Below are positions 1-49,345 of a stretch of 64,000 nucleotides of DNA, piece by piece. The position numbers were made by a program, and so were the translations under genes. Each line of letters opens with the position of its first letter. Position 1 is the first letter of the stretch. Location of the stretch: positions 186,001 to 250,000 of the IMG/VR virus record IMGVR_UViG_3300032782_000001. One strand, written 5' to 3'. Below the pieces are notes generated by a model. The model ran no database searches. It was not told the origin of the DNA and saw only the letters and a list, made by a program, of their open reading frames with translations.

Positions 1-1007
1 TTGCGTCGAATGTCTTCGGATGACACAGCTTCAGGAGGATGCCAGATATACGGTTTGCCTTTACAATTTGCTTTGAAATCTTGAGCAATGATCTTCAATC
101 GTTTCTTGTCTTCCGGAGAAAGTTCACCATCTCGGACCTTCCCAAAATCAAGACCGGTATAACACTGTTCAGGAGGTTTACCCGCTTTCCTGTCCTGTTC
201 ATACCAATCCGTCACGAATTTTCCATTGGAAGAATGAATGACATAGATTTGATTGCGGAGATTCTTATATTTCATCTCCAAGATTGCATAGAAAATATTC
301 TTGCCGTATAGATAACAATTGTTGTAAAGATAGTTCAGAGCAAGAGTGGTCTTGAGTTCTCCGCTGAATGCACAATGGATCCAATATTCACCCTGCCTAT
401 GTCCTTTACAAACTGAGTCCACTGGCTCGAGGCCGAATAACAACCGCCCTGCATATTGATTCGACTTCTCTTGAGCCTCATATTCATCGACTACTTCATC
501 GGCATCATCAGAGACTACTCCTTCGAGCTTCTCCCCGACCTCAATATGATAAATATGAGCCATCTTCTCATAGAGAAACGTGATGGCATCAGTGACTCCA
601 CGCATGACCTTCTTGCCGTTAATGGGCTTCTCTAGATTCCTACCATGTTCGGCAATTGCAGAAGCATCTCTGCAAGCTAATGAGAAAGCTTTGATCTGCT
701 GTTGTTCTTGCTCAGACTTGACAATAGCAAGATAATTTGTCCTGATGTAAGGCTGGGCCTTCCGGACTTCCTCTAGTCTATCGCAGACTTCAACGTCGTC
801 CAATTTCTCAAAGTATTCTTTAACCAGAGAGAAATCCGGCGGAGCGGACATCTGATCGTAGAATGTCTTGAGATAACCGACGATCTTTTTATCTTCTTCC
901 GATCGGAAGTCAAGGTTGTACTCTTGGAACCTATTCCAGTTATGGAAACAGTCTTCCCCTTCAGGAATATTGCCGACCTGGATTACGCTCCTTAAGATGC
1001 GTTCCAC
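1..1007 (-). CDS. DnaB-like (SF4) replicative helicase, 5' part (runs off window start)
   Basis: Not in the ORF track because it has no stop in the window. Manual translation from GTG at 1007 gives MERILRSVIQVGNIPEG...LLFGLEPVDSVCKGHRQGEYWIHCAFSGELKTTLALNY...NIFYAILEM..., matching DnaB motif H1 (G-x-x-x-L/V-D...G...GE...A-x-x-x-x-x-K-T) and H1a (F-x-x-LEM). The start overlaps the upstream gene's TAG by 1 nt. Confidence 0.85.
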   Translation of the reverse strand, partial: MERILRSVIQVGNIPEGEDCFHNWNRFQEYNLDFRSEEDKKIVGYLKTFYDQMSAPPDFSLVKEYFEKLDDVEVCDRLEEVRKAQPYIRTNYLAIVKSEQEQQQIKAFSLACRDASAIAEHGRNLEKPINGKKVMRGVTDAITFLYEKMAHIYHIEVGEKLEGVVSDDADEVVDEYEAQEKSNQYAGRLLFGLEPVDSVCKGHRQGEYWIHCAFSGELKTTLALNYLYNNCYLYGKNIFYAILEMKYKNLRNQIYVIHSSNGKFVTDWYEQDRKAGKPPEQCYTGLDFGKVRDGELSPEDKKRLKIIAQDFKANCKGKPYIWHPPEAVSSEDIRR

Positions 1008-27924: not shown

Positions 27925-30900
27925 TCAGTTGAGAATAATAAGTTGTAGAGAATTGCGTTTGAGATCCCGCACCAATCGATAAGTGTGGAAGTTTCCATCT
28001 TCCCAGTCAAAAGGACGACGGAACAAAGTTTTGCCTGAATTTAGATCTTGAACTTTGACGAAACGAAATGAACCAAGCTTTTCAAAGCCGATACCAGCTG
28101 TAAAGCCGAAAGGTCCGGCAATTCCGGAAAAACCAACATAGATTCCTGAGTCCAAATTAGTGGATGGAGAGAATACGGAATTGATTCGAATGGAAAGAGT
28201 CATTTCAAACTTGACGGAAATAGAATCAGGGAGCCCCGAGCGGCTCTCATATGCCGTTCTCGTAGTTCCAATAGTTCCGTAACGCATGAAGTCTATTGGA
28301 CCTGCACTCATCATGGTGACGGACACAGAAGAGGGATCGTCTGACAAAATGAACCAGGGCGTGTATTGAGGAACGTCTAGTCCCAACAAGAAAATGGCTG
28401 AACCACTAAGAATCATTACTTTGGACGAGGGACCAGACGTCGGGCTAATAAGCCTAATGCGTCCATCGATCTCAGATGAGGCAAGAGATGAAGGGAGTCC
28501 CGGCGCAGAGTTGATTCGTGAAACAACAGCCCCCGAAGTCGTATCACCCGCTTGGAAAGTCACGAGAACAGGATCCGCTTGATCTACCTGAATCGTGATG
28601 GTTTCTCCTCCTACGATATTGAACGGCGGGGTCAGATTCCCAACAAGCTGAGCATTCTCAGGAAGAGCCGCACCAGTGAAAGTAAGCGTCTGATCTTGTT
28701 GCGCTTTAAATCCATCAATATGCCACGTTTCATCATCCGAGAACGGTGAAACGTGACCAGGTTCCCCCGTCGGAGTCCGGAAGAATTTCATTCCTTCATA
28801 CAAAACACGTGATGGCGGATCTAGTCTAATGAACACGGTTCCGCCGTGAACACCAGGCTGGACTCTATGAAGTTCATACTTTGTCCTAATCTCATTAAGT
28901 AAATCCACCGCCGTAATCAAATCCACAGCATCGGGGGATGTGACTACATTCACAGTGTCATCTGTTACGTGCACGTCATCTGCCGTCCGATGAATGTTAA
29001 ATTTGAGTTTAAGCTGATTGGTGGTAAGAATAAGACTGGCAAGATCAGAAGGTGGGGGCAAGAACACATGATCTTGAATGTCTTCCGTCACGTGGGTTCG
29101 AGGTCGAACCAAATGCATGTTGAATTGATTCAACAGATCAGCAGCAAGGGTCAAAGCAGTAACGGTCGGTCCATCGATAGAGCTGACTGACAGCACGGGG
29201 GAGAAGCCAAAATGATAAAGGTTTCCAACTCTATGAAGGTTATACTCTGACTTGAGCTCATTGAGAAGTGTAATCGCGGTATTCAAGTCAAATGCATCTG
29301 GAGATACAACAGCATATCTAATGTCAAGATCTTCATGCAGTTCCACTTGGGACTCGATGAGTGTCCTGTGCCGATTGAATTTCAGCTTCATATCATTGAT
29401 CAATCCAATAATGGATGGCAAATCCAAAACTGGTTGACCTGCGACAATTCGAGTGAAGGAACTTGGAGAAGAATCCGGAGTCGCATAAGGAGCAGATGCA
29501 GTAAAGAATCCGGCACCTACAGCAATAACGACCCTGAACGATCCAGCATTTGGACCCGTGAGAAATTCGATAGAGTTCCCGATTCCCAAAGGAATGGTCG
29601 GATTTTCGACAGTAACCAGATCAGCTTGGACCGATCCATACCCCAGACCCGGAATCCGTAGAATCGTTTCAGCATCGAGAATGTCAGAGAAGAAATGGAA
29701 TGATGTGGCCAATACGTGGGCACTCATTTGAACTCGAACTTCGTCAGCGAGAATCGCCAGACTAGTAATATCGGAAGCGTCAGCTGCCGTCACGATATTT
29801 GTGACATCAGGCGTGATGTGGAGCGGGCCGCCGTTCCTATGACCTGTGTACTGAACAATCAAGTCATCTGCCAGTACGACAGCTGAATCAATATCAGTCG
29901 CATCGGCGGATGTAACTATGTCTTGGTTGTCATCGAAATCATGAATACCAGGTTGAGTCCTGTGGGCGTTAAATTTAGCTTTCAGTTCATTGAGTAGTGC
30001 GATGGCCGACGACAGATCTAAAGCTGCTGGAAGAATCGAAGCGTTTACGAGATCATTGGATACATGCAAACCTGGCTGCACGCGATGTGAATTATACTTA
30101 GATTGAACATCATTTGCAATAGAAATAACATCAGAAATAGCATCGGAAACTGTTGTAGCTGATGGTTCAGTAACAACGTCATCAATATCATCTTCAAGGT
30201 CAGAAATGAATCCTTTAGTATTAACAAGATCTACGGACGGAATATTTTCTACGGGAGTAACGACACGAGTTAGCCCTCCCCTAGACTCAAGATTTTGAGT
30301 CTTCGGGACTGGCGGAGTGCCTTCGCCGAGAATAGTAAAAGCAGCAACATCCGCATCGCTCATGAAATCGTCCAGAGGAGTGCCACCAGAATAAATCCGG
30401 AAGCCAAAATGTTGATGAGTCTTGGCAGTAAAAAGATGATCGGGAGACGCTACAGCATTTGCCCGATTAGTAACTTGACCGGGAGAAATAAGTCGATCGC
30501 TCAAAGTGAGTTTGCCGATGGAATACTTAATGAAATCCCATCGAGTCCGGACGATCTCTTGCGGATTGAAACTACCGAAGGCTACGGCTTGATGGCCGCT
30601 TGTGATTCCTTTCAAAAAACTTGTGGAGGATGATGGAAGTCGCAAAGAGTCGTAATTTGTGCTGATTACAGGAACTTGTCCCCCATCCACATAAACGGAA
30701 ACGGCAGACACGGGGTCACGAACAATTCGATAAGTGTGGAGCGCTGTCCAATCAACTTGATATAAATAGTATGAGTCGAGAATCGTAGGATCTCCACCCA
30801 TGAAAATTCCCACGAATCTACGACTAGAAGCGCTGGGATCAGAAATCTTACTATCACGGAAAACTGTCACAGTATTCCAATCCACCACAGACATGGCAGA

Positions 30901-33900
30901 ACGCATGTCACTTCCGTTTACTGGAGCACTTCCGGATCCAAACGACAAAGAAGGACCTGCCAATCCAGTATTTAATCCAGAATAAGTCGGTGACGGTTGT
31001 CCCGATAACGGACTAAGAAGAGATCCGTCTGCGAGGACAAAAATGGAATCGGCGTTCTTGGACGTGTAGACATCATAAGAGTGAGTTTGCCCGTCTCCCC
31101 AGTTGAAAGCGTACTGAGCTTTCACGTCCAAAGAACCGGTAGACGTATTGAAAGACACAAGATTTAGGTATTTATTGTTGGTTATCGGATCAATAGCAGT
31201 CTGCAGTTCTAAAGACTTACCGGAAGGGCCTTCATCAACGGATACTAAAGCACCACAGAAATGATATGTATTGTACGGGGGCGCCGCCGGGATACTATCA
31301 CCAGGCACGAATGAAAGAACTGCGAATCTGCAGTCCATCTTCCAATCCACAGATGAATTGAATGCTTGATTTGTAACTACAGGATCAGCAAGATTAAATA
31401 CAACATAATCAGAAACGTCTGAATCGGTCAGACGCATAGTCCGACCAAGCATTTCAGAAGACTGGGTACCGGCTCTAGTCCAAACTGGGCTATCGAGGTC
31501 AGGAAGATTCTCGCCGAACCAACTTACTCTTGGTTCCGGATTCGAGTCCTTGCCTCGATAAACTCCAGGACTGAATCCAAGTTTGGACAGCGAACTCCCG
31601 GAAATGATCTGAATACTGGATTGAATACCAACATCTGAGCTAGTGAGGGTGACTCGGCCTCCTGCTGCAGAAGCTAAAGTGAAACCAGCTGCAGTATTGA
31701 TAGTCGAAGCCACATTCACGGCAGTGGAATCAGATGGTGAGAAATTCACAGTAAAGGGAGGAGCTCCATCCAGACTAATGACGATGGAGTCACCTGAAAC
31801 CATCGGAAACGGTTCGGTAGACGATCCTGTGATAGTAGCCGGAGATGGCGAAAATTGAAGGAAACAGAATTGAACTGAAAAATTTTCGTCGTCGAGGAAA
31901 ACCCCCGCAGCTCGATTATCCAGGCTATGGGTCCAAAAATCAATCGAAGCAGCGAATTCGAAACTACAGGCAGTGTTTACAGAAAGAATAGGTTCAAGTC
32001 GTAGACATCCTCTATACGCACCAGAGCTCAAGCCTAGAGCTTGAACACTAGCAGAAGGAGCTGACGCCGTGGAATCAATCGTCAAAATTCCTGAAGCTAC
32101 TCGTTCCACGCCTCCTTGGCCAACAGTGATCCAAGGAGCTTGAGGATCCAATTCCGGAAGAGTATCAGCTTCGTAATCTACTCTCTTATTATCCCCGATT
32201 AAGTTTGCATCCACAGGGCTCATGTTGGAACGAACGAAAGCCCAATTGCTAGTTGATGTTGAATTTCTACCAATTGACCCGAAGAAAATTTGTTGTAGTG
32301 GGTCGAATTGTCCATCCAAATCGCTAATGGATGGGAGTTCCGTAACCGACGCTGTAGTAATAGGTGAAAGCCCACCGCTCAAGAAGAGTGAAATATCTCC
32401 GTCAGAATCACGGAAAATACGGTAAGTGGTAAGAACAGTCCAATCGACGCTAGCAGCATTCCAACTTTCTTGGAATTCCGCGAATCCTCGATTAGTAAGA
32501 ATCCCGGCTTGGCGAACTTGGTTGACAACGTTAGTTACGTCATTGACGAAGTGAATTCCAGGTTGTGTTTCATGTGCATTGAGTTTAGTCCTAATTTCAT
32601 TCACAAGAGTAAGAGACGTGGGCAGGTCATCCGCATCCGGAGACACAATGGGGTCAATCGTGTCTGGGATAATATGAACACCACTGGCTCCACCTTTTGC
32701 CATGTGGAGGTTCATTTTAGATTTCAGGTCATTCAATAAGATGACCAAAGATACTAGATCTGTCGCATCAACGATAACGACTGTATCATCAGGATCGTTG
32801 GGGATATGAGATCCTAGATTCGTAAGGTGTGAATTAAATTTAGCCTTCGCATCATTGACCATCACAATAGCTGACGATAGATTAATAGCGTCAGTCAGAA
32901 TGAATCCAATAACAGCCACTTTCTGGCCATCAGAAACTCCGAAAGAAACCCCTGTGAAAACTCCATCATTGACAGATTCTTCTACGAACATACGGAATGC
33001 TGCCGACAAAATAGCCGGTGCCCGCATGTCAATAGTATGAGTAAAGAACGGAGGTTGACTCGACGGTCCAGTCTGAATATTGGAATCGACGATGGTCAGT
33101 TGATTCCCTCCGGGAGCGAGAATAAACGTACCGTCACCTTCAAGAGTCCAAGGGTTATGGGCATTTTGAGGGAGTGTGATCGGGTCGTATCGAATGGTAG
33201 TTTCGAAGAAAGTTTGGAATAGGACAGGATATGCAAGACGATTGGTAGGAACGTTCAAAAGAAGGGTGCTGGGATCATTCAGAACAGCGGAATACCTCCT
33301 TTCAAGGCCTTTATACTTCCAGCCAACTTTTTGCGGCTGATAGGGGGACGTGAAATCAGGACTGGTGACTGGGTCAATAAGAAAAGACCGAGATCGATAC
33401 CTGTGTTCTGGGAATCCAGCATACCCGCGATTCCCAGCCTGATTCAGATTGAATTCTGGAGAATTTAGTCTGAGTAACTTGGCCGGCGGATTATTCAAAA
33501 ATGCATAGTTGATCGAGACTATATCTGTGGGGCTCGGTTTATTTGTAAGAACAACTGCCCCGAGAAGTCCGAATACTGCATCAACCGCAGCAGGAGACCC
33601 ATTCACAATTACGTCTACGTCCGCAGAATCATCTGCAACCATTCCAGGCCGAGGATCTTTGAGAATCCAAGAAAAAGGTCCAGTAAGGGGGCCCGGATAT
33701 AGACCCGTAATTGGTTTTACTTCTGAAATCGTGACCCGATTAACGGAATCCCCGACTTGATGAGATTTAAGGTTTTGCCTATGAGATTCAAATTTCCTAC
33801 GTAAATCATTGACAAGAATAACCGCACTAGCCAATGACGTTGCCGCAGGCGATAGAATCACATCATCCGTATCCGCAACTTTGTGAACAGGCGGAACACC

Positions 33901-34413
33901 TGATACGTCCACTACGTGTAAATTAAATTGGGTACGAATATCATTTAACATGATGATAGCCGATGCCAGATCAACAGCAATCGGGCTAGTTACTATGTTC
34001 ACGGTATCATCGGTCCCGTGGACTCCGATGATAGTAGTCCCCTGAGTAATTTTCTGAATCCTGTGAGAGTTATACCGAGCTTTGAGCTCGTTGGTTAAAC
34101 CCACGACAAGATTAGTAGTGATCCCAACATCAGAAATATCAAAACTAGCGTTTTCAAGTTGAAGAAGTTGATTATTGATGGCCTTCTTAATGTAGAAGAC
34201 CCCGTCGTTGCGGCCTCCGGCACTTCCCGTGATTGCAATTTGCTGACCCACATTGAGGGAATTGAAACTGCCAGTCGGAATTGAAACCTGCGTTTCCGAC
34301 ATAATTCGGAGGTTACTTCCGGCCAATAAATCAGCTGGCCTCTTGACAATAGGGCCTCGATTGGTAAAGAGAGTCCTATCGAGAACAGAGCTGAGACCAG
34401 TAAAGGTGATCAT
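27925..34413 (-). CDS. Giant virion protein with 15 helix-His-loop-His repeats, lectin-like (ConA/LamG-type) domains and adaptor domains
   Basis: Repeats such as LNELKAKFNAHRTQPGIHDFDD; four (D/N)W...(H/T)(T/S)Y lectin-like segments; two adaptor-domain copies. Confidence 0.7.
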   Translation of the reverse strand: MITFTGLSSVLDRTLFTNRGPIVKRPADLLAGSNLRIMSETQVSIPTGSFNSLNVGQQIAITGSAGGRNDGVFYIKKAINNQLLQLENASFDISDVGITTNLVVGLTNELKARYNSHRIQKITQGTTIIGVHGTDDTVNIVTSPIAVDLASAIIMLNDIRTQFNLHVVDVSGVPPVHKVADTDDVILSPAATSLASAVILVNDLRRKFESHRQNLKSHQVGDSVNRVTISEVKPITGLYPGPLTGPFSWILKDPRPGMVADDSADVDVIVNGSPAAVDAVFGLLGAVVLTNKPSPTDIVSINYAFLNNPPAKLLRLNSPEFNLNQAGNRGYAGFPEHRYRSRSFLIDPVTSPDFTSPYQPQKVGWKYKGLERRYSAVLNDPSTLLLNVPTNRLAYPVLFQTFFETTIRYDPITLPQNAHNPWTLEGDGTFILAPGGNQLTIVDSNIQTGPSSQPPFFTHTIDMRAPAILSAAFRMFVEESVNDGVFTGVSFGVSDGQKVAVIGFILTDAINLSSAIVMVNDAKAKFNSHLTNLGSHIPNDPDDTVVIVDATDLVSLVILLNDLKSKMNLHMAKGGASGVHIIPDTIDPIVSPDADDLPTSLTLVNEIRTKLNAHETQPGIHFVNDVTNVVNQVRQAGILTNRGFAEFQESWNAASVDWTVLTTYRIFRDSDGDISLFLSGGLSPITTASVTELPSISDLDGQFDPLQQIFFGSIGRNSTSTSNWAFVRSNMSPVDANLIGDNKRVDYEADTLPELDPQAPWITVGQGGVERVASGILTIDSTASAPSASVQALGLSSGAYRGCLRLEPILSVNTACSFEFAASIDFWTHSLDNRAAGVFLDDENFSVQFCFLQFSPSPATITGSSTEPFPMVSGDSIVISLDGAPPFTVNFSPSDSTAVNVASTINTAAGFTLASAAGGRVTLTSSDVGIQSSIQIISGSSLSKLGFSPGVYRGKDSNPEPRVSWFGENLPDLDSPVWTRAGTQSSEMLGRTMRLTDSDVSDYVVFNLADPVVTNQAFNSSVDWKMDCRFAVLSFVPGDSIPAAPPYNTYHFCGALVSVDEGPSGKSLELQTAIDPITNNKYLNLVSFNTSTGSLDVKAQYAFNWGDGQTHSYDVYTSKNADSIFVLADGSLLSPLSGQPSPTYSGLNTGLAGPSLSFGSGSAPVNGSDMRSAMSVVDWNTVTVFRDSKISDPSASSRRFVGIFMGGDPTILDSYYLYQVDWTALHTYRIVRDPVSAVSVYVDGGQVPVISTNYDSLRLPSSSTSFLKGITSGHQAVAFGSFNPQEIVRTRWDFIKYSIGKLTLSDRLISPGQVTNRANAVASPDHLFTAKTHQHFGFRIYSGGTPLDDFMSDADVAAFTILGEGTPPVPKTQNLESRGGLTRVVTPVENIPSVDLVNTKGFISDLEDDIDDVVTEPSATTVSDAISDVISIANDVQSKYNSHRVQPGLHVSNDLVNASILPAALDLSSAIALLNELKAKFNAHRTQPGIHDFDDNQDIVTSADATDIDSAVVLADDLIVQYTGHRNGGPLHITPDVTNIVTAADASDITSLAILADEVRVQMSAHVLATSFHFFSDILDAETILRIPGLGYGSVQADLVTVENPTIPLGIGNSIEFLTGPNAGSFRVVIAVGAGFFTASAPYATPDSSPSSFTRIVAGQPVLDLPSIIGLINDMKLKFNRHRTLIESQVELHEDLDIRYAVVSPDAFDLNTAITLLNELKSEYNLHRVGNLYHFGFSPVLSVSSIDGPTVTALTLAADLLNQFNMHLVRPRTHVTEDIQDHVFLPPPSDLASLILTTNQLKLKFNIHRTADDVHVTDDTVNVVTSPDAVDLITAVDLLNEIRTKYELHRVQPGVHGGTVFIRLDPPSRVLYEGMKFFRTPTGEPGHVSPFSDDETWHIDGFKAQQDQTLTFTGAALPENAQLVGNLTPPFNIVGGETITIQVDQADPVLVTFQAGDTTSGAVVSRINSAPGLPSSLASSEIDGRIRLISPTSGPSSKVMILSGSAIFLLGLDVPQYTPWFILSDDPSSVSVTMMSAGPIDFMRYGTIGTTRTAYESRSGLPDSISVKFEMTLSIRINSVFSPSTNLDSGIYVGFSGIAGPFGFTAGIGFEKLGSFRFVKVQDLNSGKTLFRRPFDWEDGNFHTYRLVRDLKRNSLQLIILN

Positions 34414-36908
34414 GGAATTACCGCATTCCCTGCCGTATCAGTGAGACCAACGGCTTGAAGGGTATATGAGATGGGTTCCATGCTGGTTACTCGAATTGAC
34501 ACAACTTGCGGATCTCTCCAACTCATTTCTTTGACCACAATAGATCCACCTGTAAGGACTAAGTTAGATGAATCGAGTGGGACTTGATACATTGGCTTAG
34601 AAAAGTATACTTCTACAGTGTCGGCTTCCAGTCGAACACCGGCATCAGTGTCAACAATTCCAGGCCTAGGGAGTGCGGATGCCAAAGAGGGGGTGGACGC
34701 AACACCTTCAATGGGGAATTGGATCGATACTTGATGGTGATGATCTGCCCCTAAATGCCTACCATCAAATGTACCGGGGGTCAAATCACCATCGGAATTA
34801 TCATGATACACATCTTTGAAATTAGCAGAAAAAGTATACGTCATGCTATCGATCATTGAATCAGTCTCAATGATGATTCCATCAAAGAGTCGAGCTGAAT
34901 AAATACGCCATCCCGGTGCAGAATGAACTCCCAATTTAATATTGTGAGCCAAGAATTTCTTACGAATTTCGGCCACTAGCGCCACCAAAGTATCCATATC
35001 AGAAGCAATTGGTGCCTGGACGATATCGAAATCTGATTGGAAATGATAAAAATTACTCGACATATGATTGTTGAGATTGATAACAAATGAATTGACAGAT
35101 ATGATTGCATCTTCTAAAGTAGGAGAAACGGCGTAAACCGGATTATTCATGAAATCAATATTCTGGTGACCAGCTCCTGTATTAGGGAATCCTGAAACAT
35201 GTTGTGAGAATGCAAATGCAAGTTGATTGAATGCCCACATAACACCAGGGAGAGTAGCTGAAACTCTAACTGAATTAGACTCAACAATATTCCCACTAGA
35301 ATCCAGAAGTTTGACTGAACTGGAAGAGTCAAGAAGCGGTTCTCTATCGAAGAAGAGAGCTGCTGATTCATCCACTACTTCCTGATCGAAAATCTGAGTA
35401 ACCTGCGTATTGACTGCACGGGCAATAATGCTGCCTGTGTAATCACCAGGATTGGTCATACTACCGGCGTCATCACTTGTAAGCGTGGCTGCAATCGTAA
35501 CGGGTATTTCATTGGAATTCATGACTAGATGTAAATCCGCGTAATAAGTATAGGGGGTTTCCGCAGGGAACACTTGCGGAAACAAATCTGTGGACGCACT
35601 TAATTGAGTCCTGTCTAAAATTTCTGGTCCAATCTGGAATGGGTACCTAATAGAAAAAGGGACAGAATAAATAGGAGCCAAATGACCATTATAAGCCGGC
35701 TTCAAATTCTGGTTCATCACAGCCACGGCGAATCCGAGTTGACCATGAGGAACGGACAAGAATCCGAATGTGTTGTATAAGTCATTGTAAACATGAACAC
35801 CGGACGCCACAAAGTGAGATAGAACTTTCAGTTGTCCTTCATTCAAGATGTCGATACCGCTGTCTGTATCAACAGCGTCAGGTGATGTGACCGTATCAGT
35901 AGGATCATTGTTGACATGTATTCCGGCTGCCACCAGATGAGCATTGAATTTTGCCTTGAAGTCATTCATGAGAGTGACAAATGTGGGCTCATCAATTGCG
36001 TCGGGGGCTGTAATTAGATCAACCGTATCTGTATGGACGTGCGGACCTTGCTGAGTCACTGACCAATTCGTTTGAGTTCGAGCATCTCCAACTGGTCCGT
36101 TGAAATAAACACGAACAGTGCCAGTCATGATGAAATCGTTACTAACATCTGCTACGTATGCATCAATAATCTGAAGTTGAGTAATTTTTGTGTAGTCATA
36201 CGGAAGAGGAGACCTTAAAACTAGGTCTAAATCAGTGCTACCAGTAGCCGAATTGAAAGACTGGTCTACGACACCTGAGAAGTCAATCGCATAGGAATTA
36301 GCCGCCGCCATTCCTGGAGGAAGTGCAAATCTCAAAGAGGATTCAGGTAGAACGAGTTCCGAAGACCAAACTTGAAGCGTCATAGCGACGCCTCCGCCAC
36401 CATTCGAATCTCTGATTGTTGCTGTTGCAGCAGGAGAAGTGGGTCCTACGGATCGATCAAAAACAATATCCACACAACCACGACGGGACAGATAAGCTCC
36501 GAGAACATGAGGAGGGTCAATAACATTAGCAGTAAAATTGCGAGCTGCCCCAGAAACTCCTTCGCCTGCAGCATCTTCCACACCAAACACTTGAACGGAA
36601 TAAGCCGTACCTGAGGTAAGGCTGAGAGAAAGGTTCAAAACAACAGAGCGTCGAGTTTCATCATAAAACTCGACTGAAAGAATGGCTGGAACTATGGCTG
36701 TCCCTGGAGGAGCCAAAGACGACATGAAATACATACCAACAGGGAGTGCTGAATCTGTAACAGGAACGTCGAATACAATTCGGACTTTCCGGGCACCAAT
36801 CTGATGGGCCGTAAACCCGAACGTGCCGAGACCGAATGAATCAACAATCCCGAGAACGATGTTCCCGAGTTGACTGTTCGGAGTGCCGAGCCTTCCAGTA
36901 AAGGGCAT
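34410..36908 (-). CDS. Virion protein with Ig-like (Big-type) domains and 6 helix-His-loop-His repeats
   Basis: V.I.FD.PV...Y...V.GV.D.AG Ig-like segments at both ends; two His-repeat triplets; ATGA overlap with the 2162-aa gene. Confidence 0.7.
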   Translation of the reverse strand: MPFTGRLGTPNSQLGNIVLGIVDSFGLGTFGFTAHQIGARKVRIVFDVPVTDSALPVGMYFMSSLAPPGTAIVPAILSVEFYDETRRSVVLNLSLSLTSGTAYSVQVFGVEDAAGEGVSGAARNFTANVIDPPHVLGAYLSRRGCVDIVFDRSVGPTSPAATATIRDSNGGGGVAMTLQVWSSELVLPESSLRFALPPGMAAANSYAIDFSGVVDQSFNSATGSTDLDLVLRSPLPYDYTKITQLQIIDAYVADVSNDFIMTGTVRVYFNGPVGDARTQTNWSVTQQGPHVHTDTVDLITAPDAIDEPTFVTLMNDFKAKFNAHLVAAGIHVNNDPTDTVTSPDAVDTDSGIDILNEGQLKVLSHFVASGVHVYNDLYNTFGFLSVPHGQLGFAVAVMNQNLKPAYNGHLAPIYSVPFSIRYPFQIGPEILDRTQLSASTDLFPQVFPAETPYTYYADLHLVMNSNEIPVTIAATLTSDDAGSMTNPGDYTGSIIARAVNTQVTQIFDQEVVDESAALFFDREPLLDSSSSVKLLDSSGNIVESNSVRVSATLPGVMWAFNQLAFAFSQHVSGFPNTGAGHQNIDFMNNPVYAVSPTLEDAIISVNSFVINLNNHMSSNFYHFQSDFDIVQAPIASDMDTLVALVAEIRKKFLAHNIKLGVHSAPGWRIYSARLFDGIIIETDSMIDSMTYTFSANFKDVYHDNSDGDLTPGTFDGRHLGADHHHQVSIQFPIEGVASTPSLASALPRPGIVDTDAGVRLEADTVEVYFSKPMYQVPLDSSNLVLTGGSIVVKEMSWRDPQVVSIRVTSMEPISYTLQAVGLTDTAGNAVIP

Positions 36909-36911
36909 GAA

Positions 36912-37769
36912 TCAACTAGTCCTGGACCGACGTGCTAGTTTCTTCCTTGCAAAAACAACTAAAGCACGTGCCTTTCGGCATACTATGCATTCGTATCGAA
37001 CCTTTAAGCCAATTTTCTTATGGCATTCTCCGATCGGGATTGGACCGTGGACCTTGCAGTTGAAATGAGTCCGTTCTAATGATAACCTCTTGAGAGTCGC
37101 ACCACCGTTCTTGATCGCGGCATCTGACGGACGACGACCTTTCATGGCTGCAGAGATTTTAGCTCTCGCTTCCGTGGATAGCTTTCTGCCTGACGACGCC
37201 TGCCGGATTTTTTCTTTATGGTCATTGGAGAGCTTCTTCCCCCGTTGCACTTCGGAAATTTTCCGCTTAGACTCGTCGGAATGGTGTTTTCCTTTGAAAG
37301 AAGAACCGAGAGCCACAATCTCCGGACGAGAATGAACTTCCTTGGAAATTTTGGACATCTTCTGACGATATTCAGGCGTCCATGATGCCTTACTAACTGC
37401 AGACGCCTTCTCTCGGAAGCCCGGACGGTTCCAGTAATCAGTTTTAACTGAATGTGGGGTATGAAGTCCTCCCTGCATAAGATTGAAACCCTTCTCGGAA
37501 TTCCTTGTGTCGTAGAATTCAATCCAACTCTCTTCAGCTAGATTCGCAACTCCGAGCTCAGAGCAAACTTCAAGCACCTCGTGCAAAAAAGCATCCTTCC
37601 CATATTTCCGAATTGCACTCCAAAAATAACGACATCCTTTGCCGAGTTTGGACTTCGCATTATGAAGATGTTGATTCCATCGCTTCATCATTGTGAGCTT
37701 CGTCAGCCCAATATAGCGACGTCCAGATTCAGTATGCGTATGACAGTAAATAGTCCAGCGAGTCCCCAT
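36912..37769 (-). mobile_element. Free-standing GIY-YIG homing endonuclease with NUMOD3-like repeats (copy 2)
   Basis: TIY...GRRYIGLT, RWNQH, AIRKYGKDAF, KGFNL..GG; GKHHSDESKRKIS, GKKLSNDHKEKI, GRKLSTEARAKIS; C-terminal CxxH...CxxC. Confidence 0.88.
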
Positions 37770-37796: not shown

Positions 37797-40550
37797 TCAT
37801 GCCCAGGTAAATACGATTTGTGCCAGTTTGCAGGTAGCCTGATCCGAAGGCCCAGGACCAGTAGGACCAGAAGGTCCCGTCGGATAGCATCTAAGCTGAA
37901 CTTCGTAGAGTTGCATCTGGTTATCCAAGTCGGCCGGCACGGTCAGTATCTGTCGAACGAGTGTGGGAGTGGTATTGATCAAGTTCTTCGTAGTTCCCGA
38001 AATACCAGTACCGACGCCAAGGTTATAGAGACGAATCTCTGCATACATGCTTGGCGTGGACTCAATAACAGCTTGCCATTCGATTTGTCGACCACTGACT
38101 TGAGTTTTGGTTGGATCTACTGCGATGGCTCCAATACCAACGAAGCCAGTTTGACCAGTTTGTTGAGCTCCAACCACCCCCGGGAAAACAACAGAAATTG
38201 GGAATGGTCCAGATCCGCCCCCACCACCTCCACCAGGACCAGTTGCACCTTGAGGACCCGTCGCTCCGGTAGCTCCGGCGGGTCCGGTAGCTCCGGCGGG
38301 TCCGGTAGCTCCCGTTACGCCTGGAGATCCTTGCGAACCAATAGCTCCTTGCGGTCCAGTGGCTCCTGTAACTCCTGGAAGGCCGATCGGACCTGTGGAT
38401 CCCTGAGGTCCGGTAGGTCCCGCAGGTCCAATTGCACCTTGAGGACCAGTCGCCCCCGTCAACCCCGGAGATCCTTGAGGAGCTCCGGCGGGTCCGGTAG
38501 CTCCAGTGACCCCGTCCATGCCGGCAGGACCCGTAGCCCCCTGAGGACCCGTAGCCCCCGGAGCTCCAGTTACTCCGTCCGCACCTTGTGGTCCAGTGGC
38601 TCCAGTGACGCCGGGTGACCCTTGAGGAGCTCCCGCAGGTCCAGTTACTCCAGTGACCCCAGGTGAGCCCTGAACGCCCTGCGACCCAGTAGGGCCAACC
38701 GCACCCGTCGCCCCAGTTGCACCAGCATTTCCAATGGGTCCGGTTGCACCTTGTGGACCGGTTGCACCTTGTGGACCGGTTGGACCAGTTACTCCAGTTA
38801 AACCTGGAGACCCTTGCGGACCTGTTGCTCCTTGTGGCCCCGTAGATCCTTGTGGCCCCGTAGATCCTTGTGGTCCAGTCGCCCCAGTTGCTCCTTGGGG
38901 ACCAGTTGCTCCTTGGGGACCAAGGGGCCCTGTAACGCCATCAATTCCCGTTGCACCTTGAAGGCCCGTTGCACCTTGTGGACCGGTTACTCCCTGCGCT
39001 CCGGTTGTACCGACAGGTCCAGTTGGGCCAGTTGCTCCAGTGGCCCCTTGTGGACCGGTTGCACCTTGTGGACCGGTTGTACCAATAGGTCCAGTCGGGC
39101 CAGTTGCTCCAGTGACTCCGTCTACACCGGTGGCGCCTTGTGGACCAGTTACACCATCAGCTCCTGTTGAGCCCTGCGGCCCTGTGGGGCCAGTAGCCCC
39201 CGTTGCACCTGGGGGCCCACCAAAGGGACCCGTAGGCCCTTGAGGACCAGTGGAACCGGTAACACCTTGTGGGCCTGCAGGACCTGTCGGACCAGTAGTT
39301 CCCGTAAAACCTGGAGAACCTTGCGGCCCGATTGAACCAGTAGGTCCTTGGGGACCTGTGGGGCCAGTTGCACCTTGCGGGCCAGTTGGTCCAATTGGAC
39401 CACCAGAAGGTCCAGTCGGGCCAGTAGCACCAACGGCACCAACCAAACCAATCGCAGAAATTTCGCCTGTTAAGAAATTGACAGTTCCGGAGTTAGCAAG
39501 CCATTGAACCTTTACGGTATAAGTTCCAGCTGACAAGGCCGTGGACGTAAACGTCCCGGCCACAATGCTCATGGAAGTGGATTCTCCATCCTCTTGGAGA
39601 GATGGACCGTTTTGGGAGTCAATAACGAGTCGAAAAACGGCAGAACTTGAAAGAACATCAGGCTGCCACTGGAGAGAGAACGACGCCGAAATAGGCGCCG
39701 TACTTCCAATAGTGACGCTCGTAGACATACCCGGGATGTCTACGAATCCGACACTCGTAGTCTGAGCAAATGTCGGAGTGCTAATATATCCGAAGGGAAT
39801 TGGAGCGGGGGCTGGTGCCGGACCCTGAATACCCGTAGCGCCTTGTAAACCTGTAGCTCCTTGTGGTCCAGTGACTCCCGGAGAACCTTGAGGCCCAGTC
39901 GGCCCCGTGGCACCAGTCGCTCCAACTGGCCCAGCAGCACCTGTGACTCCAGCGGGTCCAGTGACTCCCGGAGAACCTTGAGGCCCAGTCGTTCCAGGAC
40001 TACCTTGGGGACCTGTGGTTCCTGCAATACCAGGAGAACCTTGAGTTCCTTGGGATCCCGTAGCTCCTCTCGGTCCCGTTGGTCCAGTCGCCCCCGTCGA
40101 TCCGACAGGTCCGGTGGCTCCAGTTGGTCCCTGAGGACCTCCAAAAGGCCCCGTGGGACCCTGGGCACCAGTAGGACCCACAGGGCCCGTGACACCAGTA
40201 GGACCCGCAGGTCCCGCAGGTCCTATGGGACCCGTAGAACCAGCAGGACCGGTAATTCCGGTGATGTCTGTTTTAAGTTGATCAATGGCCCCTGCAGTCA
40301 AAATATGAGTGACTGTCGCGCCGAAAGCGTGGGTCGCTGCGGAAGTTCCCTCTTGACCACGGAGAACTGTAAATAAATTCCCGGCGACTCCAGTGACGAT
40401 CAAAATCTCATCGTCAATCCGAATACGGAATTGCGGGAGAGGAGGAAACAACGCAGCGCTGGCGACAGTAACATTCGTCGCCACGGGGCTAATGCCGCCG
40501 AGCTGGTTGATAGTCGTCTGTGCGCCGTTGGAGAATTTCTCGGTGGTCAC
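37797..40550 (-). CDS. Collagen-like fibre protein (two Gly-X-Y blocks, internal BclA-CTD-like domain)
   Basis: About 50 and about 135 G-X-Y triplets rich in GPT/GAT/GPQ; N-terminal '[10 protein letters not shown]...[15 protein letters not shown]' domain; middle '[12 protein letters not shown]...FRLVID...[10 protein letters not shown]'; GTG start. Confidence 0.88.
38230..40265. repeat. Coding tandem repeats (9/18-bp periodicity) of the collagen region
   Basis: For example (GGTCCGGTAGCTCCGGCG)n near 38265-38312, (GGACCGGTTGCACCTTGT)n near 38737-38782, and a 36-bp duplicate GGTCCAGTGACTCCCGGAGAACCTTGAGGCCCAGTC near 39865 and 39955. Confidence 0.9.
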
Positions 40551-41458: not shown

Positions 41459-44400
41459 TCAGCTTGCCGGCCGATAGGTCAAAGTGATGTCCCCCGGAGT
41501 CAAGAATTCAATTTGAGATGTATTGATATCTTGAACTCCCTTATCACCACTCACTACATAGGTTGCAGAAAATGCATGGTTGCCGGGAACGTCTGGTGGA
41601 GTCGCACCAGCGTCGAGTGAGACCACCACCCGATTAGCAGTCCTACGGACTCTCTCAGCGGGAATAGCAGAAGCCACGAATACAACGGGCAAAAGAGTAG
41701 CGTCGTCCGAATACCCTTGAATAACAGCACCGTTCTGACCAATAATCCAAGATTGATTTACAGCATTTCCCACGGATTCCAAAGAATCTGCCATTTTCAT
41801 GATGAGGTCATCTTTGAAAACACCATGATGAATATTATTAGCACCTCCACCGTCAGTGGTATTGAATGGAAGCGCTTGAGTCAGAAGATAAACAGCGTTA
41901 GCGAATGCGTTCAAAGACGGCAGAGCCACAGATTCGGGCAGAATTTCATCTCGAATTCGAACGGCTCCATCTTGGAGGGATAAACGAGAGAACGGCTGGA
42001 CGACAAAATCTACTCCCGTTGTGTCGTCAATAACGGATGTTACGTCTGATTGATGGATGGAACCACCAACACCTTTGGAGTCAGTCAAAATAGTGAACGA
42101 AGTTCGAATGGCGGAGTCAACTGTGGCTTGATTTGCATTTGGAAGCAGCTGGACAGTAGCTTCTACCGATATCGGATTCTCAAGAGCTTGCTTCACTACA
42201 ACATCCGCAGTAACATGCCGCATCGTTTGGATTTTGGCTTGCAGCTGTTGTAGAACATCGTTCACCACATAGGTAACGGAAAAATTTTCATCTTTCTGAT
42301 AATCGACCGATATTGTCGCACCGCTTGCGATGTTGGATAAAGTCGTTCGAATAATCTTGATAGGTGTGGTCTGTGATCCACCAACGACAAGATAATCTGG
42401 ATTGGCATTATCAGGGCCGTTATATTGAATAGTCCTGTCTTTACTATAGACCACCAGAGTAAAGCTATTGATACCAACGGAATCGAGAGGCTCCTGGAAT
42501 TCACCAATCAATACATGTTGTTCGTCATTGACCTGGAGTGAATTCCCGGAAGGAACATTCCCAACTTGATTGATCGTAATGAAGTCCTTAGCAATAGTGC
42601 TCTCTCCTTCAAGGAGAGGATCTTGGATCTTGAAAATGGTGAAGCCTAATACAGAATCAAGCGCTCCTGAAACTTCGCCAGTTACAGATGAAACCCTTAG
42701 GATCGGTTGAATCGATGGAATGAATTTGTTGTTACTACGGAATCTATAATCACCTTCCACGAAGTCATCGAGAAGGGTCTGCGGCTGCGGAATGGATTGG
42801 CTGAGACGAATTGTCCTATAGTCAACGAGAGTAACTCCCGTCAGATCATAAGAAGCGGTGGGAAGATCCGAATGATTTCTCAACCCGAGTCCTTGGCTCG
42901 GGTTGAAGAGCATTTCTACGATCGGATTGGATGGGGTGAGTCTTGAATCTCTGGCTCGAAACGTGAGAGTAGTGACGTCAATAACATCAAACCTTATGTT
43001 TTTTGCAATCTCAAACTGGAAAGCAAATGTTTCCGTAGTGGTCCTCTCAAGAGTCCCTTTCACATAAATATCGACTTTGCCGCCAATGTGCTTTTTGCGG
43101 ACTTCATCATAGTCACGCATCATGAAAGGATCGCCCGATTTAATTACGCGCGTCTCGAGAACACCAGGCACAGAAATAGAATTCTCTTCGTAACCACCTT
43201 CGGTACCAGTATCCAAAGAAGAAAGTGCGTTTTGTGCGCTCTCTGCGAGTTCCAAGTTACTCTGAACGTCTCGACCAAAATCTGCAGCTACTTCATTGAT
43301 AGTATTGAAACCACTCGCGCCAGATACGACTGTATCAATACTCCCAGCGGGGATATTGCCTGCCGAACCCGGGGTATCGGCAAACATTTGGACTTTGATC
43401 TCATATCTACGAGTATCTTGATTGTAGAAACTCTGAGCATTGGCCGCGGTAAGTGTAGCCGCACCTTTAGCTCTATAACGTGGAGCCGTACTGACAGTGG
43501 ACGAAGAAACGATAGCGTTTTGCGCCACAATCAGGTCACGTGTCGGTTTCGTAGTCGTATAGAATGTCTGGTTAACAACCGACGGCCGACTACCAAGGCG
43601 GGGGATTCCGAAATTTTTTGCTAGAGAGTCAAACGCGGAATCAATTAACCCTTGGGTGGCAGCGTCCGTAGACAGGCTCAAAGCCGCCTTCAGTGCTTGT
43701 TTATACTGAGAATTAGATACTGGAATGCTCGTCCCCGTGAGACCAGGGTCGTCGATTTGAAGGAGAGCGGAGAAAGACTTAGCTCGATGGACAAAGTCCA
43801 TCAAAAAATAAGCCTTTTGCATTTCATTAGCAAAAGGTTCAATATGAACTTCCCGAACTGTGGACCCAGGAATCAAAGAAAGAGTTGGCTGAACTGTTGA
43901 AATCTCTCGAATATAATTATTAACGACCGCATCTTGTTGACGGATCTGGATACCGCGAACAGTTGCGTCTAAAGCTAGAGGGTTCCCAGAAATTTCTTGA
44001 GAGAACCTACTCTCTTGGAGAAGACCGGTGGATTTATTGAAGAAGACAGATGTTATGACGTAGAAGAGGGGATCTTCAGACGCAACTGCCGCAAATGTAT
44101 CGGAGTTGAGAGTGTTGTTAACGATCCCATTATTGCGATTATGATTGAAGGTAAAAAAATTGGTCTCTTCCAGAGCGGAAACGGATACGGTTAGTCTGAA
44201 ATTAGGCTGACCAAGAAGTGAATATCGATTATCTGACGTCTGAGTGATGACCTCATTTGTAACTGGGTCAAGAATTTGTGAAACAATCCTGACATCATTT
44301 CCAGAAAAAGGCGTGATTTGAGGTGCGGAATCAGTAAGATCATAACTTACTGATGAGCTCGGAATTTCTTCCACTACGGTGGTCGTTGGAGAGGTGAAAG

Positions 44401-44911
44401 GAATCGTATCTTTGTTGATACGAAGATACCCCGATCCTGTTCCGCCTTCTCCTGTAGAAGCATACACATTATATCCAGTAATGGACGAAGAAGAAGAAAC
44501 ATCAGACCAAGTAATATCAACTGAGCTAGCACGACGTTTAAGAACGATCCCCGTTGGAGGAGTCAACAAGTTTTTCAGGTCGGACTCAGCAACGACCGTA
44601 GCACTGATAGTTGCTGCGGGACTAACAGCGCCTGTGATATCAACTGCCCTGAGTCTAATGACATTCAGACCCTTGTCCAGTTTGAGACCGTCTGGAAAAC
44701 TGGACAAGTTAGGAACCGTGAAATTCGGGAGCGCAAGATCGACCAAAGAAGGATCCGACACAAACCCAGCGTCGTTGACATCAATTTGAACGTCAATGAC
44801 ATTCGGACCCACGGAACCAGTAAAAACCAGCCCGAACAAATTCGTAGTGATGGTTAGGGATGAGGTTGTCCCGGAACCGTCAAAATAATTCAGCTGCGGC
44901 GTGGCCGTCAT
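41459..44911 (-). CDS. Baseplate J-like wedge protein (T4 gp6 analog) with N-terminal Ig/Fn3 extension
   Basis: PGSTVREVHIEP, FDSLAKNFGIPR, A..PGSAGNIPAGSI, FGRDVQSNLEL, GT..GY...SVPGV, GGKVDIYV, IHQSDV...IDDTTGVDFV. Confidence 0.85.
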   Translation of the reverse strand: MTATPQLNYFDGSGTTSSLTITTNLFGLVFTGSVGPNVIDVQIDVNDAGFVSDPSLVDLALPNFTVPNLSSFPDGLKLDKGLNVIRLRAVDITGAVSPAATISATVVAESDLKNLLTPPTGIVLKRRASSVDITWSDVSSSSSITGYNVYASTGEGGTGSGYLRINKDTIPFTSPTTTVVEEIPSSSVSYDLTDSAPQITPFSGNDVRIVSQILDPVTNEVITQTSDNRYSLLGQPNFRLTVSVSALEETNFFTFNHNRNNGIVNNTLNSDTFAAVASEDPLFYVITSVFFNKSTGLLQESRFSQEISGNPLALDATVRGIQIRQQDAVVNNYIREISTVQPTLSLIPGSTVREVHIEPFANEMQKAYFLMDFVHRAKSFSALLQIDDPGLTGTSIPVSNSQYKQALKAALSLSTDAATQGLIDSAFDSLAKNFGIPRLGSRPSVVNQTFYTTTKPTRDLIVAQNAIVSSSTVSTAPRYRAKGAATLTAANAQSFYNQDTRRYEIKVQMFADTPGSAGNIPAGSIDTVVSGASGFNTINEVAADFGRDVQSNLELAESAQNALSSLDTGTEGGYEENSISVPGVLETRVIKSGDPFMMRDYDEVRKKHIGGKVDIYVKGTLERTTTETFAFQFEIAKNIRFDVIDVTTLTFRARDSRLTPSNPIVEMLFNPSQGLGLRNHSDLPTASYDLTGVTLVDYRTIRLSQSIPQPQTLLDDFVEGDYRFRSNNKFIPSIQPILRVSSVTGEVSGALDSVLGFTIFKIQDPLLEGESTIAKDFITINQVGNVPSGNSLQVNDEQHVLIGEFQEPLDSVGINSFTLVVYSKDRTIQYNGPDNANPDYLVVGGSQTTPIKIIRTTLSNIASGATISVDYQKDENFSVTYVVNDVLQQLQAKIQTMRHVTADVVVKQALENPISVEATVQLLPNANQATVDSAIRTSFTILTDSKGVGGSIHQSDVTSVIDDTTGVDFVVQPFSRLSLQDGAVRIRDEILPESVALPSLNAFANAVYLLTQALPFNTTDGGGANNIHHGVFKDDLIMKMADSLESVGNAVNQSWIIGQNGAVIQGYSDDATLLPVVFVASAIPAERVRRTANRVVVSLDAGATPPDVPGNHAFSATYVVSGDKGVQDINTSQIEFLTPGDITLTYRPAS

Positions 44912-49051: not shown

Positions 49052-49345
49052 TTAGCGTTTGCTAATACTATCTCTAACTCCAATAAGATGATCGATTCTA
49101 GATCTTTCCACTTTGATCAAATTCTCCATTCGTTCTTTCACGGTCTGAAGATGAGCTTTGACTCTTCCGAAGTGAATCCTTTGGTTATGCTTCCATGGGA
49201 TTCCCTTCTCTACCCCAGAGCCAGCGCAATCAGAAGCTTCTGCTGATCGTCCAGAAGCTTCTGAAGATTCTCCACTCTCGTATCCGCTGCCTGCTTCAGC
49301 TGCGTCAACGATCCCGTTTTCCGATTGATCCTCTGGTCGATCCAT
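49052..49345 (-). CDS. Small protein overlapping the end of the 1752-aa gene (start uncertain)
   Basis: Fills the 158-nt gap with a plausible helical C-terminus (WKHNQRIHFGRVKAHLQTVKERMENL). The only upstream ATG lies 136 nt inside the previous gene. Confidence 0.45.
   Translation of the reverse strand: MDRPEDQSENGIVDAAEAGSGYESGESSEASGRSAEASDCAGSGVEKGIPWKHNQRIHFGRVKAHLQTVKERMENLIKVERSRIDHLIGVRDSISKR

What the first reader, a model, noticed from the sequence alone, without database searches (positions are those of the whole stretch)
35675..36045. Circularly permuted His triplet supports a closed three-fold unit
Seen: this triplet begins with an extra loop element (GPHVHTDTVD) before helix 1, while helix 3 (PAYNGHLAP) lacks its downstream loop His, so the count is still three helix-His plus three loop-His. 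Inference: permutation preserving six ligands is what a closed pseudo-symmetric domain predicts, and an open solenoid would not need it.
Basis: inference. Interest (0 to 1): 0.6.

Follow-up and report, generated by a model that had tools for sequence, protein, structure and literature searches.

The report
Circularly permuted three-helix histidine domain
A tail-region protein of a 436-kb phage-like genome carries a small three-helix domain with six invariant histidines whose last loop has moved to the front; predicted structures and repeat counts in about a thousand unannotated relatives suggest the three repeats close into one compact unit.

Summary
Residues 288-411 of an 832-aa protein (window 34410-36908, minus strand) hold three helices ending in N-x-H. 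An H-x3-D loop precedes helix 1 and none follows helix 3. Six His (H290, H324, H331, H365, H372, H409) and three Asp are invariant in five orthologues at 34-58% identity. The leading His is invariant in 36 permuted triplets from diverse proteins.

The 41-aa repeat defines a large unannotated, mostly viral metagenomic family: 996 clusters, no Pfam family, no PDB sequence match.
- Repeat numbers are multiples of three in 107 of 150 proteins.
- About a fifth of 3n arrays have the permuted layout, in at least four clades.
- A leading loop and a trailing loop almost never occur together.

AlphaFold2 models both layouts with high confidence (pLDDT 93-94) as three 19-residue helices joined by about 22-residue connectors, with the flanking strands paired. 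The nearest solved arrangement is the three-fold BARA domain, at modest Z.

So the closed three-fold unit is supported. Two points stay untested because no model coordinates were available: whether the six His form one metal site, and whether the leading His fills the third loop position. Triplet closure inside long contiguous arrays is also not shown.

The parts
34410..36908 (-). Gene for P0001 (832 aa). It has an N-terminal Big_5 Ig-like domain, the permuted His triplet, a middle region, a second (canonical) His triplet and a C-terminal beta-rich part.
   Evidence: ORF and translation; Pfam Big_5 at residues 40-120; five full-length orthologues.
35661..36059 (-). Permuted triplet domain with its two flanking strands (P0001 residues 284-416).
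   Evidence: AlphaFold2 model m2d855cf021d6: pLDDT 94.5, pTM 0.87; elements E5-8, H28-46, H69-87, H112-131, E134-137 of P0001:280-425.
35991..36047 (-). Leading loop-plus-connector element (residues 288-306). It has the same motif as the internal connectors (H-x3-D-x2-N/D-x-V/I-T-x-P-D-A).
36039..36041 (-). Codon of H290, the conserved leading loop His. D294 lies at 36027-36029.
   Evidence: Read directly from the sequence. Invariant in A1 and in 36 permuted triplets, A3.
35934..35990 (-). Helix 1 (residues 307-325). Helix His H324 is at 35937-35939.
35904..35918 (-). Loop 1, H331-x3-D335.
   Evidence: Invariant.
35811..35867 (-). Helix 2 (residues 348-366). Helix His H365 is at 35814-35816.
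35781..35795 (-). Loop 2, H372-x3-D376.
   Evidence: Invariant.
35679..35738 (-). Helix 3 (residues 391-410). Helix His H409 is at 35682-35684. No loop His follows; the chain runs directly into the C-flank strand.
34914..35270 (-). Second triplet of P0001 (residues ~547-665) in the canonical layout. Helix His are 570, 615, 655; loop His are 581, 622, 662.
27925..34413 (-). Gene for P0002 (2162 aa) with 15 repeats arranged 3 + 3 + (4, 75-aa insert, 5). Its start overlaps the P0001 stop in ATGA.
32494..32916 (-). Canonical triplet used for comparison (P0002 residues 500-640).
   Evidence: AlphaFold2 model m30d3726f2dbd: pLDDT 93.2, pTM 0.87; elements E4-7, H13-31, H54-72, H98-117, E134-137.

Best explanation
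The region is one copy of an undescribed, mostly phage-borne domain built from three ~41-residue repeats.

Proposed architecture:
- Each repeat is a short cap, a ~19-residue helix ending in N-x-H, a loop with H-x3-D, and an extended connector.
- The three helices pack in parallel around a pseudo-three-fold axis. Each connector runs back along the bundle to the start of the next helix.
- This puts the three helix His (in the core stripe) and the three loop His at the same end of the bundle.

The two layouts:
- In the usual layout the chain enters at the helix-start end and the third loop and connector return there.
- In P0001 residues 288-411 the cut point is shifted. The chain enters at the His end with the loop and connector that would otherwise come last, and leaves straight after helix 3. 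This is a natural circular permutation (a phase shift) of a closed repeat domain. The same six His and three Asp are kept.

What is shown:
- the motif layout and its conservation;
- the rule of three;
- the recurrence of the permuted layout;
- confident compact predicted models for both layouts.

What is inferred:
- the parallel packing;
- the exact position of the leading His;
- a single buried metal site, octahedral His6 or 3+3, with Asp as second shell. It would rigidify a bead-like module in virion fibre or baseplate-peripheral proteins.

My confidence is about 0.8 for closure and permutation and about 0.4 for one shared metal site.
For: - Layout and invariance of H290, D294, H324, H331, D335, H365, H372, D376 and H409 in orthologues.
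- The leading His is invariant, and the Asp four residues later is present in at least 90%, in 36 permuted triplets.
- All six His are invariant in 46 canonical triplets.
- The family is large: 996 clusters at E<=1e-3.
- Matched stretches are a multiple of three in 107 of 150 proteins, p=2.6e-21. Arrays are 3n in 198 of 304 cases.
- Among 3n arrays, 149 are canonical, 34 permuted, 7 have both loops and 8 have neither. Fisher p=9e-24, not corrected for relatedness.
- The permuted layout occurs in at least 4 clades.
- P0002 orthologues keep nine repeats in their third array, whether contiguous or split 4+5 by an insert.
- The helix His is in phase with the hydrophobic 3-4 stripe L10-A13-A/L17-L20-Y24-H27. 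Across 1262 repeats, H27 and H34 are 100% and D38 is 99%.
- AlphaFold2 gives pLDDT 94.5 and 93.2, pTM 0.87 for both. Each model has three ~19-residue helices, 22-24-residue connectors and one N-flank and one C-flank strand as the only strands. In the permuted model helix 3 ends 2 residues before the C-flank strand, and the leading His lies 3 residues after the N-flank strand.
- Both models share the same best structural matches, including BARA/Beclin ECD. The permuted model 12..132 aligns to chain 320..531 from S1 onward; the canonical model 6..125 aligns to 339..537. BARA is S1-H1-S2-H2-S3-H3 with approximate 3-fold symmetry and a central three-helix bundle (PMC3351336).
- The gene lies in a tail module: Baseplate_J-like protein, collagen-like fibre.
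Against: - No coordinates were available, so no His-His distance, helix direction or superposition was measured.
- Structural matches are modest (Z 5-7). The tool warns this can be a common helical arrangement.
- The lead/trail exclusivity also follows from any whole-number repeat array cut in another phase.
- The relatedness-controlled test was underpowered and inconclusive.
- In long contiguous arrays every third connector has the same length as the others (p=0.76), with only a weak motif difference (p=0.014). Discrete closed triplets inside long arrays are therefore not shown.
- About 30% of proteins do not give a multiple of three. These are probably missed repeats, but that is unproven.
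- Metal binding is wholly inferred.
- AlphaFold2 used alignments of repeats that resemble each other, which may favour a symmetric solution.
Confidence: 0.7

Rival explanations
1. The domain is closed and permuted as described, but the six His do not form one metal site. They would form three local His-His-Asp sites (one per repeat junction), or a metal-free buried His/Asp/Asn hydrogen-bond network, possibly pH-sensitive.
For: The helix His and loop His of one repeat are only 7 residues apart and are followed by an invariant Asp (H-x6-H-x3-D), a spacing compatible with a local site. N18, N25 and N41 are also highly conserved, which suggests hydrogen-bond roles. No metal evidence of any kind was obtained.
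Against: With strictly local (same-repeat) sites, the permuted layout would leave H290 and H409 without partners, yet both are invariant. The helix His lies in the core stripe and so should point to the axis.
Confidence: 0.2
2. There is no closure. The repeats form an open array (solenoid or beads), and the 'permutation' only reflects an array of three whole periods that starts at a different phase of the repeat.
For: Any whole-number array gives a leading or a trailing loop, not both. Connectors between presumed triplets in long arrays do not differ in length from those within triplets.
Against: - An open array gives no reason for multiples of three.
- It does not explain why nine repeats are kept when an insert splits an array.
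- One layout would carry two orphan yet invariant His.
- AlphaFold2 models are compact, with paired termini.
Confidence: 0.06
3. The helices assemble between chains. The protein is a homotrimeric fibre, and each layer is a three-helix bundle made of the same repeat from three chains, as in the helix-turn-helix supercoil of the phi29 head fibre. The His would then form inter-chain sites like the His6-Fe sites of T4 gp37, P2 gpV and R-pyocin fibres.
For: The gene lies in a tail-fibre and baseplate setting. There are weak matches to phrog_6994 'head fiber protein' (E 5e-4 to 5e-6). Inter-chain His6 iron sites are common in phage fibres (PMC6116203).
Against: Inter-chain layering gives no reason for repeat numbers in threes. 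The monomer models are confident and closed. The 22-24-residue connectors match the length needed to return along a 19-residue helix. The HxH motif of the known iron sites is not conserved here, since H292 varies.
Confidence: 0.04

Closest known systems
BARA domain of Vps30/Atg6 and the Beclin 1 ECD (PDB 3vp7, 4ddp)
   Same: One chain with three repeats, approximate three-fold symmetry, three helices forming a central bundle and long crossovers between them. The order sheet-helix x3 matches the permuted layout. Among the best structural matches of both models: Z 6.4/5.5 and 5.2/5.1, 109-115 residues aligned, rmsd 3.3-3.9.
   Different: No sequence relation (3-8% identity, no Pfam hit). BARA crossovers are three-stranded sheets, whereas here they are irregular connectors with no sheets. 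BARA has no His cluster. It is eukaryotic and acts in membrane targeting. Z is below the level the tool regards as specific.
His6-Fe(II) sites of phage fibres and spikes (T4 gp37, P2 gpV, phi92 spike, R1/R2 pyocin fibres)
   Same: Six His arranged with three-fold symmetry in virion fibre proteins. They act as buried structural metal sites (PMC6116203).
   Different: Those sites are built by three chains from an HxH motif in beta-structure. Here the six His would come from one chain: helix ends and loops of three pseudo-repeats. HxH is not conserved, and metal binding is untested.
[quoted passage not shown]
   Same: A repeating helix-plus-connector unit in a virion fibre, with three helices per layer (described in PMC6116203). 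The only annotated family with any sequence signal is phrog_6994 'head fiber protein'.
   Different: gp8.5 layers are inter-chain in a homotrimer, and repeat number is not tied to three. The sequence signal is weak and covers only one helix. There is no PDB sequence match.
Phase-shifted closure in closed repeat folds, such as the beta-propeller 'velcro' and natural circular permutants (own knowledge)
   Same: In a closed repeat domain the chain ends can lie at different phases of the repeat without changing the fold. Both phases occur in nature.
   Different: The fold differs, and here the moved piece carries an invariant putative ligand.
Designed parallel three-stranded coiled coils with a 3-His Zn site (own knowledge)
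   Same: His at a core a/d position of three parallel helices converge on the axis.
   Different: Those are three separate peptides, lack a second ring of loop His, and are man-made.

Membership tests
The new 41-aa His repeat family (defined here by profile A2) | A ~41-aa repeat with a hydrophobic 3-4 stripe ending in N-x-H, followed by a loop with H-x3-D-x2-N. | tested here: met
   P0001 has 6 repeats and P0002 has 15. The profile finds 996 clusters. Column statistics come from 1262 repeats.
The new 41-aa His repeat family (defined here by profile A2) | Repeats occur in multiples of three. | tested here: met
   P0001 is 3+3 and P0002 is 3+3+9. Family-wide, 107 of 150 proteins fit the rule.
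BARA / Beclin ECD | Sequence match to the family models. | tested here: not met
   No Pfam hit other than Big_5. Identity in structural alignments is 3-8%.
BARA / Beclin ECD | Three beta-sheet-plus-helix repeats with approximate three-fold symmetry. | tested here: inconclusive
   Three-helix repeats and a modest Z of 5.1-6.4. DSSP shows no three-stranded sheets in the connectors.
HxH His6-iron site of phage fibres and spikes | Conserved H-x-H motif contributed by three chains. | tested here: not met
   H290-V-H292 is present in P0001, but H292 is replaced in all five orthologues.
HxH His6-iron site of phage fibres and spikes | Bound Fe(II) with octahedral His6 geometry. | not testable with these tools
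   No coordinates and no metal modelling were available.
phi29 gp8.5-like head fibre (phrog_6994) | Significant match over the profile. | tested here: inconclusive
   E=5e-4 over residues 299-323 only, with 0 stretches passing on their own. Small relatives give E 5e-6 to 9e-4.
phi29 gp8.5-like head fibre (phrog_6994) | Inter-chain homotrimeric helix layers. | not tested
   No oligomer prediction was run. The rule of three and the closed monomer models argue against it.
Big_5 bacterial Ig-like domain (N-terminus of P0001, outside the finding) | Pfam score above the gathering cut-off. | tested here: met
   32.6 bits against a cut-off of 23.6, residues 40-120.

The most novel reading that the evidence does not exclude
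A widespread, unannotated phage domain family forms a previously unsolved fold: a single-chain, pseudo-three-fold parallel three-helix bundle. It buries an invariant His6(Asp3) cluster and binds one metal ion, making a one-chain counterpart of the three-chain His6-iron sites of phage fibres. It occurs naturally in two circularly permuted forms and is strung in up to nine triplets per protein.
Probability: 0.3. Interest if true: 0.7.

Novelty: new variant of a known kind. Interest (0 to 1): 0.55.

Why it matters
Closed pseudo-symmetric repeat domains and their circular permutants are known in principle. This family has no Pfam model, no solved relative and no clear structural match. It has about a thousand 50%-identity clusters, almost all from uncultured viruses, and it makes up much of some 2000-residue virion proteins.

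The two natural layouts are a ready-made test of how a closed repeat fold tolerates moving its chain ends. The six invariant His give a clear, cheap biochemical hypothesis: one metal per triplet.

If the site is real, it would show that phages reach the His6 fibre-stabilising site by two routes, three chains or one chain with three repeats. It would also offer a compact natural scaffold for metal-site design. A profile for this repeat would improve annotation of jumbo-phage tail regions.

Tried and rejected
**Searches that found nothing useful**
- Pfam on P0001, P0002 and ten small relatives: only Big_5 (N-terminus of P0001) and stray hits.
- PDB sequence searches with a 551-aa piece and with the repeat profile: nothing.
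- Foldseek against PDB and BFVD, and the ESM Atlas shape search: no meaningful match.
- Atlas feature search: only unnamed viral clusters.
- tblastn against 50,697 phage records with P0001, a small relative and a nine-repeat piece: none, none, and one weak hit.
- IMG/VR scan with P0001: nothing.
- Cluster names: all 'hypothetical protein'.
- Literature searches found no description of this domain.

**Weak or negative results**
- Context look-ups gave only generic phage structural neighbourhoods.
- The relatedness-controlled test of lead versus trail was underpowered.
- A period-three signal in connector length inside long arrays was sought and not found.

**Readings rejected**
- The leading element as a vestige of a fourth repeat: the upstream sequence is a beta-strand flank, not a helix.
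- HxH iron motif: H292 is not conserved.

**Not done or not needed**
- Complex prediction was not used, because no inter-protein binding is claimed.
Full report
**Setting**

The window is bases 186001-250000 of a single 436,316-bp contig with 50% G+C. All long reading frames around the finding lie on the minus strand and form a phage tail module:
- a 1150-aa Baseplate_J-like protein;
- a 917-aa collagen-repeat tail-fibre protein;
- a GIY-YIG/NUMOD3 homing endonuclease;
- P0001 (34410-36908, 832 aa);
- P0002 (27925-34413, 2162 aa), whose start overlaps the P0001 stop in ATGA.

Only genetic code 11 was used.

**The observation**

The finding covers P0001 residues 288-411. The sequence reads as follows:
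- a leading G-P-H290-V-H292-T-D294 element with a T-A-P-D-A cap;
- helix 1 ending at H324, then loop H331-x3-D335;
- helix 2 ending at H365, then loop H372-x3-D376;
- helix 3 ending at H409, with no His after it.

The comparison triplet in P0002 (residues ~509-632) has the helix-then-loop order three times and no leading His. The description is correct. One refinement is that only H290 of the two leading His is the conserved one. It is followed by Asp at +4, exactly like the internal loops.

In five orthologues (34-58% identity) H290, D294, H324, H331, D335, H365, H372, D376 and H409 are invariant. H292 and H387 vary, and none has a His after helix 3.

**The repeat and its family**

The unit is about 41 residues. 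P0001 has 3+3 copies. P0002 has 3+3+4+5, with a 75-residue insert between the last two groups. A third protein elsewhere on the contig has one more triplet.

No Pfam family matches. The only annotated signal is a weak hit to phrog_6994 'head fiber protein'. No PDB sequence matches.

A profile of the 21 local repeats, scored against 1.84 billion representative proteins, found 996 proteins at E<=1e-3 and 465 at E<=1e-10. Their names are all 'hypothetical'. The few contexts recovered are phage structural regions. Cultured-phage records almost lack the family.

Across 1262 mapped repeats the helix His and the loop His are 100% conserved, the Asp 99% and the following Asn 98%. The helix His continues the 3-4 hydrophobic stripe L10-A13-A/L17-L20-Y24-H27. 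It therefore occupies a core position at the C-terminal end of the helix.

**Rule of three**

In the search tool's own count, 107 of 150 proteins have a multiple of three matched stretches (p=2.6e-21 against one third). After I refined the profile, 198 of 304 arrays are 3n long: 149 of three, 24 of six, 15 of nine, 6 of twelve. Most exceptions look like missed divergent repeats.

Orthologues of P0002 carry 3+3+9. The nine are contiguous in some members and split 4+5 by an insert in P0002 and others, so the count is kept across the insertion.

**The permuted layout is recurrent**

Among 3n arrays the counts are:

| Layout | Arrays |
|---|---|
| Canonical (no leading loop, trailing loop His) | 149 |
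| Permuted (leading H-x3-D, no trailing His) | 34 |
| Both loops | 7 |
| Neither loop | 8 |

Several of the 'neither' arrays have a leading His at slightly different spacing. The raw association is very strong (Fisher p=9e-24). The sequences are related, however.

On a tree of the shared core the permuted form falls into at least four clades. These include the P0001 orthologue group and a group of small 150-350-aa proteins. A test on independent pairs was underpowered.

In an alignment of 36 permuted triplets, the leading His and the three helix His are invariant. In 46 canonical triplets all six His are invariant.

**What the permutation does and does not prove**

Any array of a whole number of periods that starts at another phase will have a leading or a trailing loop but not both. 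Mutual exclusivity alone does not show closure.

The informative point is that both layouts keep every His invariant. Suppose the His worked as local pairs in an open array. Then one layout or the other would carry two partnerless His at its ends. Closure removes that problem, and the rule of three independently calls for it.

**Predicted structures**

With these alignments AlphaFold2 gives confident models:

| Model | pLDDT | pTM | Elements |
|---|---|---|---|
| Permuted (P0001:280-425) | 94.5 | 0.87 | E5-8, H28-46, H69-87, H112-131, E134-137 |
| Canonical (P0002:500-640) | 93.2 | 0.87 | E4-7, H13-31, H54-72, H98-117, E134-137 |

Each model has three equal ~19-residue helices joined by 22-24 irregular residues. 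That is the length needed to return along a helix, which implies parallel helices (inference).

In each model the only strands are one at each flank, which therefore pair. The domain is a closed excursion whose ends meet.
- In the canonical model the N-flank runs almost directly into helix 1, and 16 residues follow helix 3 before the C-flank.
- In the permuted model 19 residues precede helix 1, and helix 3 ends two residues before the C-flank.

The cut point thus lies at the helix-start end in one layout and at the His end in the other. This is what a circular permutation of a closed unit predicts. The leading His, three residues after the N-flank strand, should then lie close to the end of helix 3 and its His. 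This is inference from topology, not a measurement.

**Structural neighbours**

Foldseek finds nothing in the PDB or BFVD, and the Atlas shape search finds only one unnamed viral cluster.

The exhaustive VIA-align search gives the same modest top matches for both models:

| Match | Z (permuted / canonical model) |
|---|---|
| Designed helical filament, 8ubg | 7.3 / 6.9 |
| Single-chain gp41 five-helix bundle | 5.9 / 6.0 |
| BARA domain of Vps30, 3vp7 | 6.4 / 5.5 |
| Beclin 1 ECD | 5.2 / 5.1 |

BARA is described as S1-H1-S2-H2-S3-H3 with approximate three-fold symmetry and a central three-helix bundle (PMC3351336). The permuted model aligns from BARA residue 320, the start of the modelled domain (whose first element is S1), beginning at the model's leading element. 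The canonical model aligns only from residue 339. This is consistent with the leading element sitting where a crossover precedes helix 1.

The Z values are below what the tool regards as specific. This is a likeness of arrangement, not membership.

**Mechanism proposed**

I propose a compact bead-like module of virion fibre or baseplate-peripheral proteins. Three core His at the helix ends and three loop His gather at one pole of a parallel three-helix bundle, and the Asp act as second-shell partners.

The most economical reading is one buried structural metal site per triplet. It would be a one-chain analogue of the three-chain His6-Fe(II) sites of T4 gp37, P2 gpV and R-pyocin fibres (PMC6116203). 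This is inference. A metal-free hydrogen-bond network or three local sites remain possible.

**Limits**

- Long contiguous arrays show no every-third-connector signature in length (p=0.76). There is only a weak motif difference (p=0.014). Whether long arrays are strings of closed triplets is therefore open.
- The homotrimer alternative was not modelled.

**Verdict**

The closed three-fold reading is supported by independent evidence. The ligand role of the His and the exact seat of H290 remain to be measured.

The thing itself is an apparently undescribed, widespread phage domain family with two natural circular permutants.

Noticed in passing
window 36912-37769 (-): A GIY-YIG plus NUMOD3 homing endonuclease gene (285 aa; phrog_314 E=6e-33) sits between the collagen-like fibre gene and P0001, inside the tail module.
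   Followed up: partly
window 37797-40550 (-): A 917-aa protein with nine stretches of collagen triple-helix repeat (Pfam Collagen E=5e-70). It matches many phage tail-fibre PHROGs.
   Followed up: partly
window 41459-44911 (-): A 1150-aa Baseplate_J-like protein (PF04865, phrog_6 baseplate wedge). It is much longer than usual, so it carries extra domains.
   Followed up: no
window 27925-34413 (-), P0002 residues ~1580-1655: A ~75-residue insert splits a nine-repeat array into 4+5. Some orthologues have the nine repeats contiguous, so the insert lies inside a presumed triplet.
   Followed up: partly
window 34410-34413: The stop of P0001 and the start of P0002 overlap in ATGA, which suggests coupled translation of the two repeat proteins.
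   Followed up: yes
G000:C1:272280-276977 (-), outside the window: A third protein of the contig (about 1566 aa) carries one more triplet of the same repeat at residues ~866-984.
   Followed up: no
P0053, P0138, P0106, P0089 (relatives): Some relatives have long permuted-phase arrays (9-15 repeats) with shortened or lengthened units, for example helices joined without the usual connector. These are variant repeat architectures that the triplet model does not yet explain.
   Followed up: no
long arrays in relatives: Connectors between presumed triplets have the same length as those within triplets. Only the H-x3-D-x2-N motif is somewhat rarer at every third connector (42% vs 57%, p=0.014).
   Followed up: partly
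C-terminal end of arrays: P0002 ~1849-1875, P0058, P0122, P0034: A recurrent junction motif follows the last repeat of some arrays: G-V-H-G/D-x-x-V-x-I-R-L/I-D/N-P/A-P-S-G/R-V-L. It probably marks the start of a conserved downstream domain.
   Followed up: no
whole contig and window 6091-15355, 49210-61416 (-): Several very long ORFs (1192-1752 aa) have no or almost no PHROG match. The repeat family is nearly absent from 50,697 deposited phage genomes, so the contig is a very divergent jumbo-phage-like genome.
   Followed up: partly
window 2367-4571 (-): A 734-aa DNA helicase (phrog_62 E=4e-77) lies at the low-coordinate end of the window. It lies in a part of the window that does not look like the tail module.
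   Followed up: no
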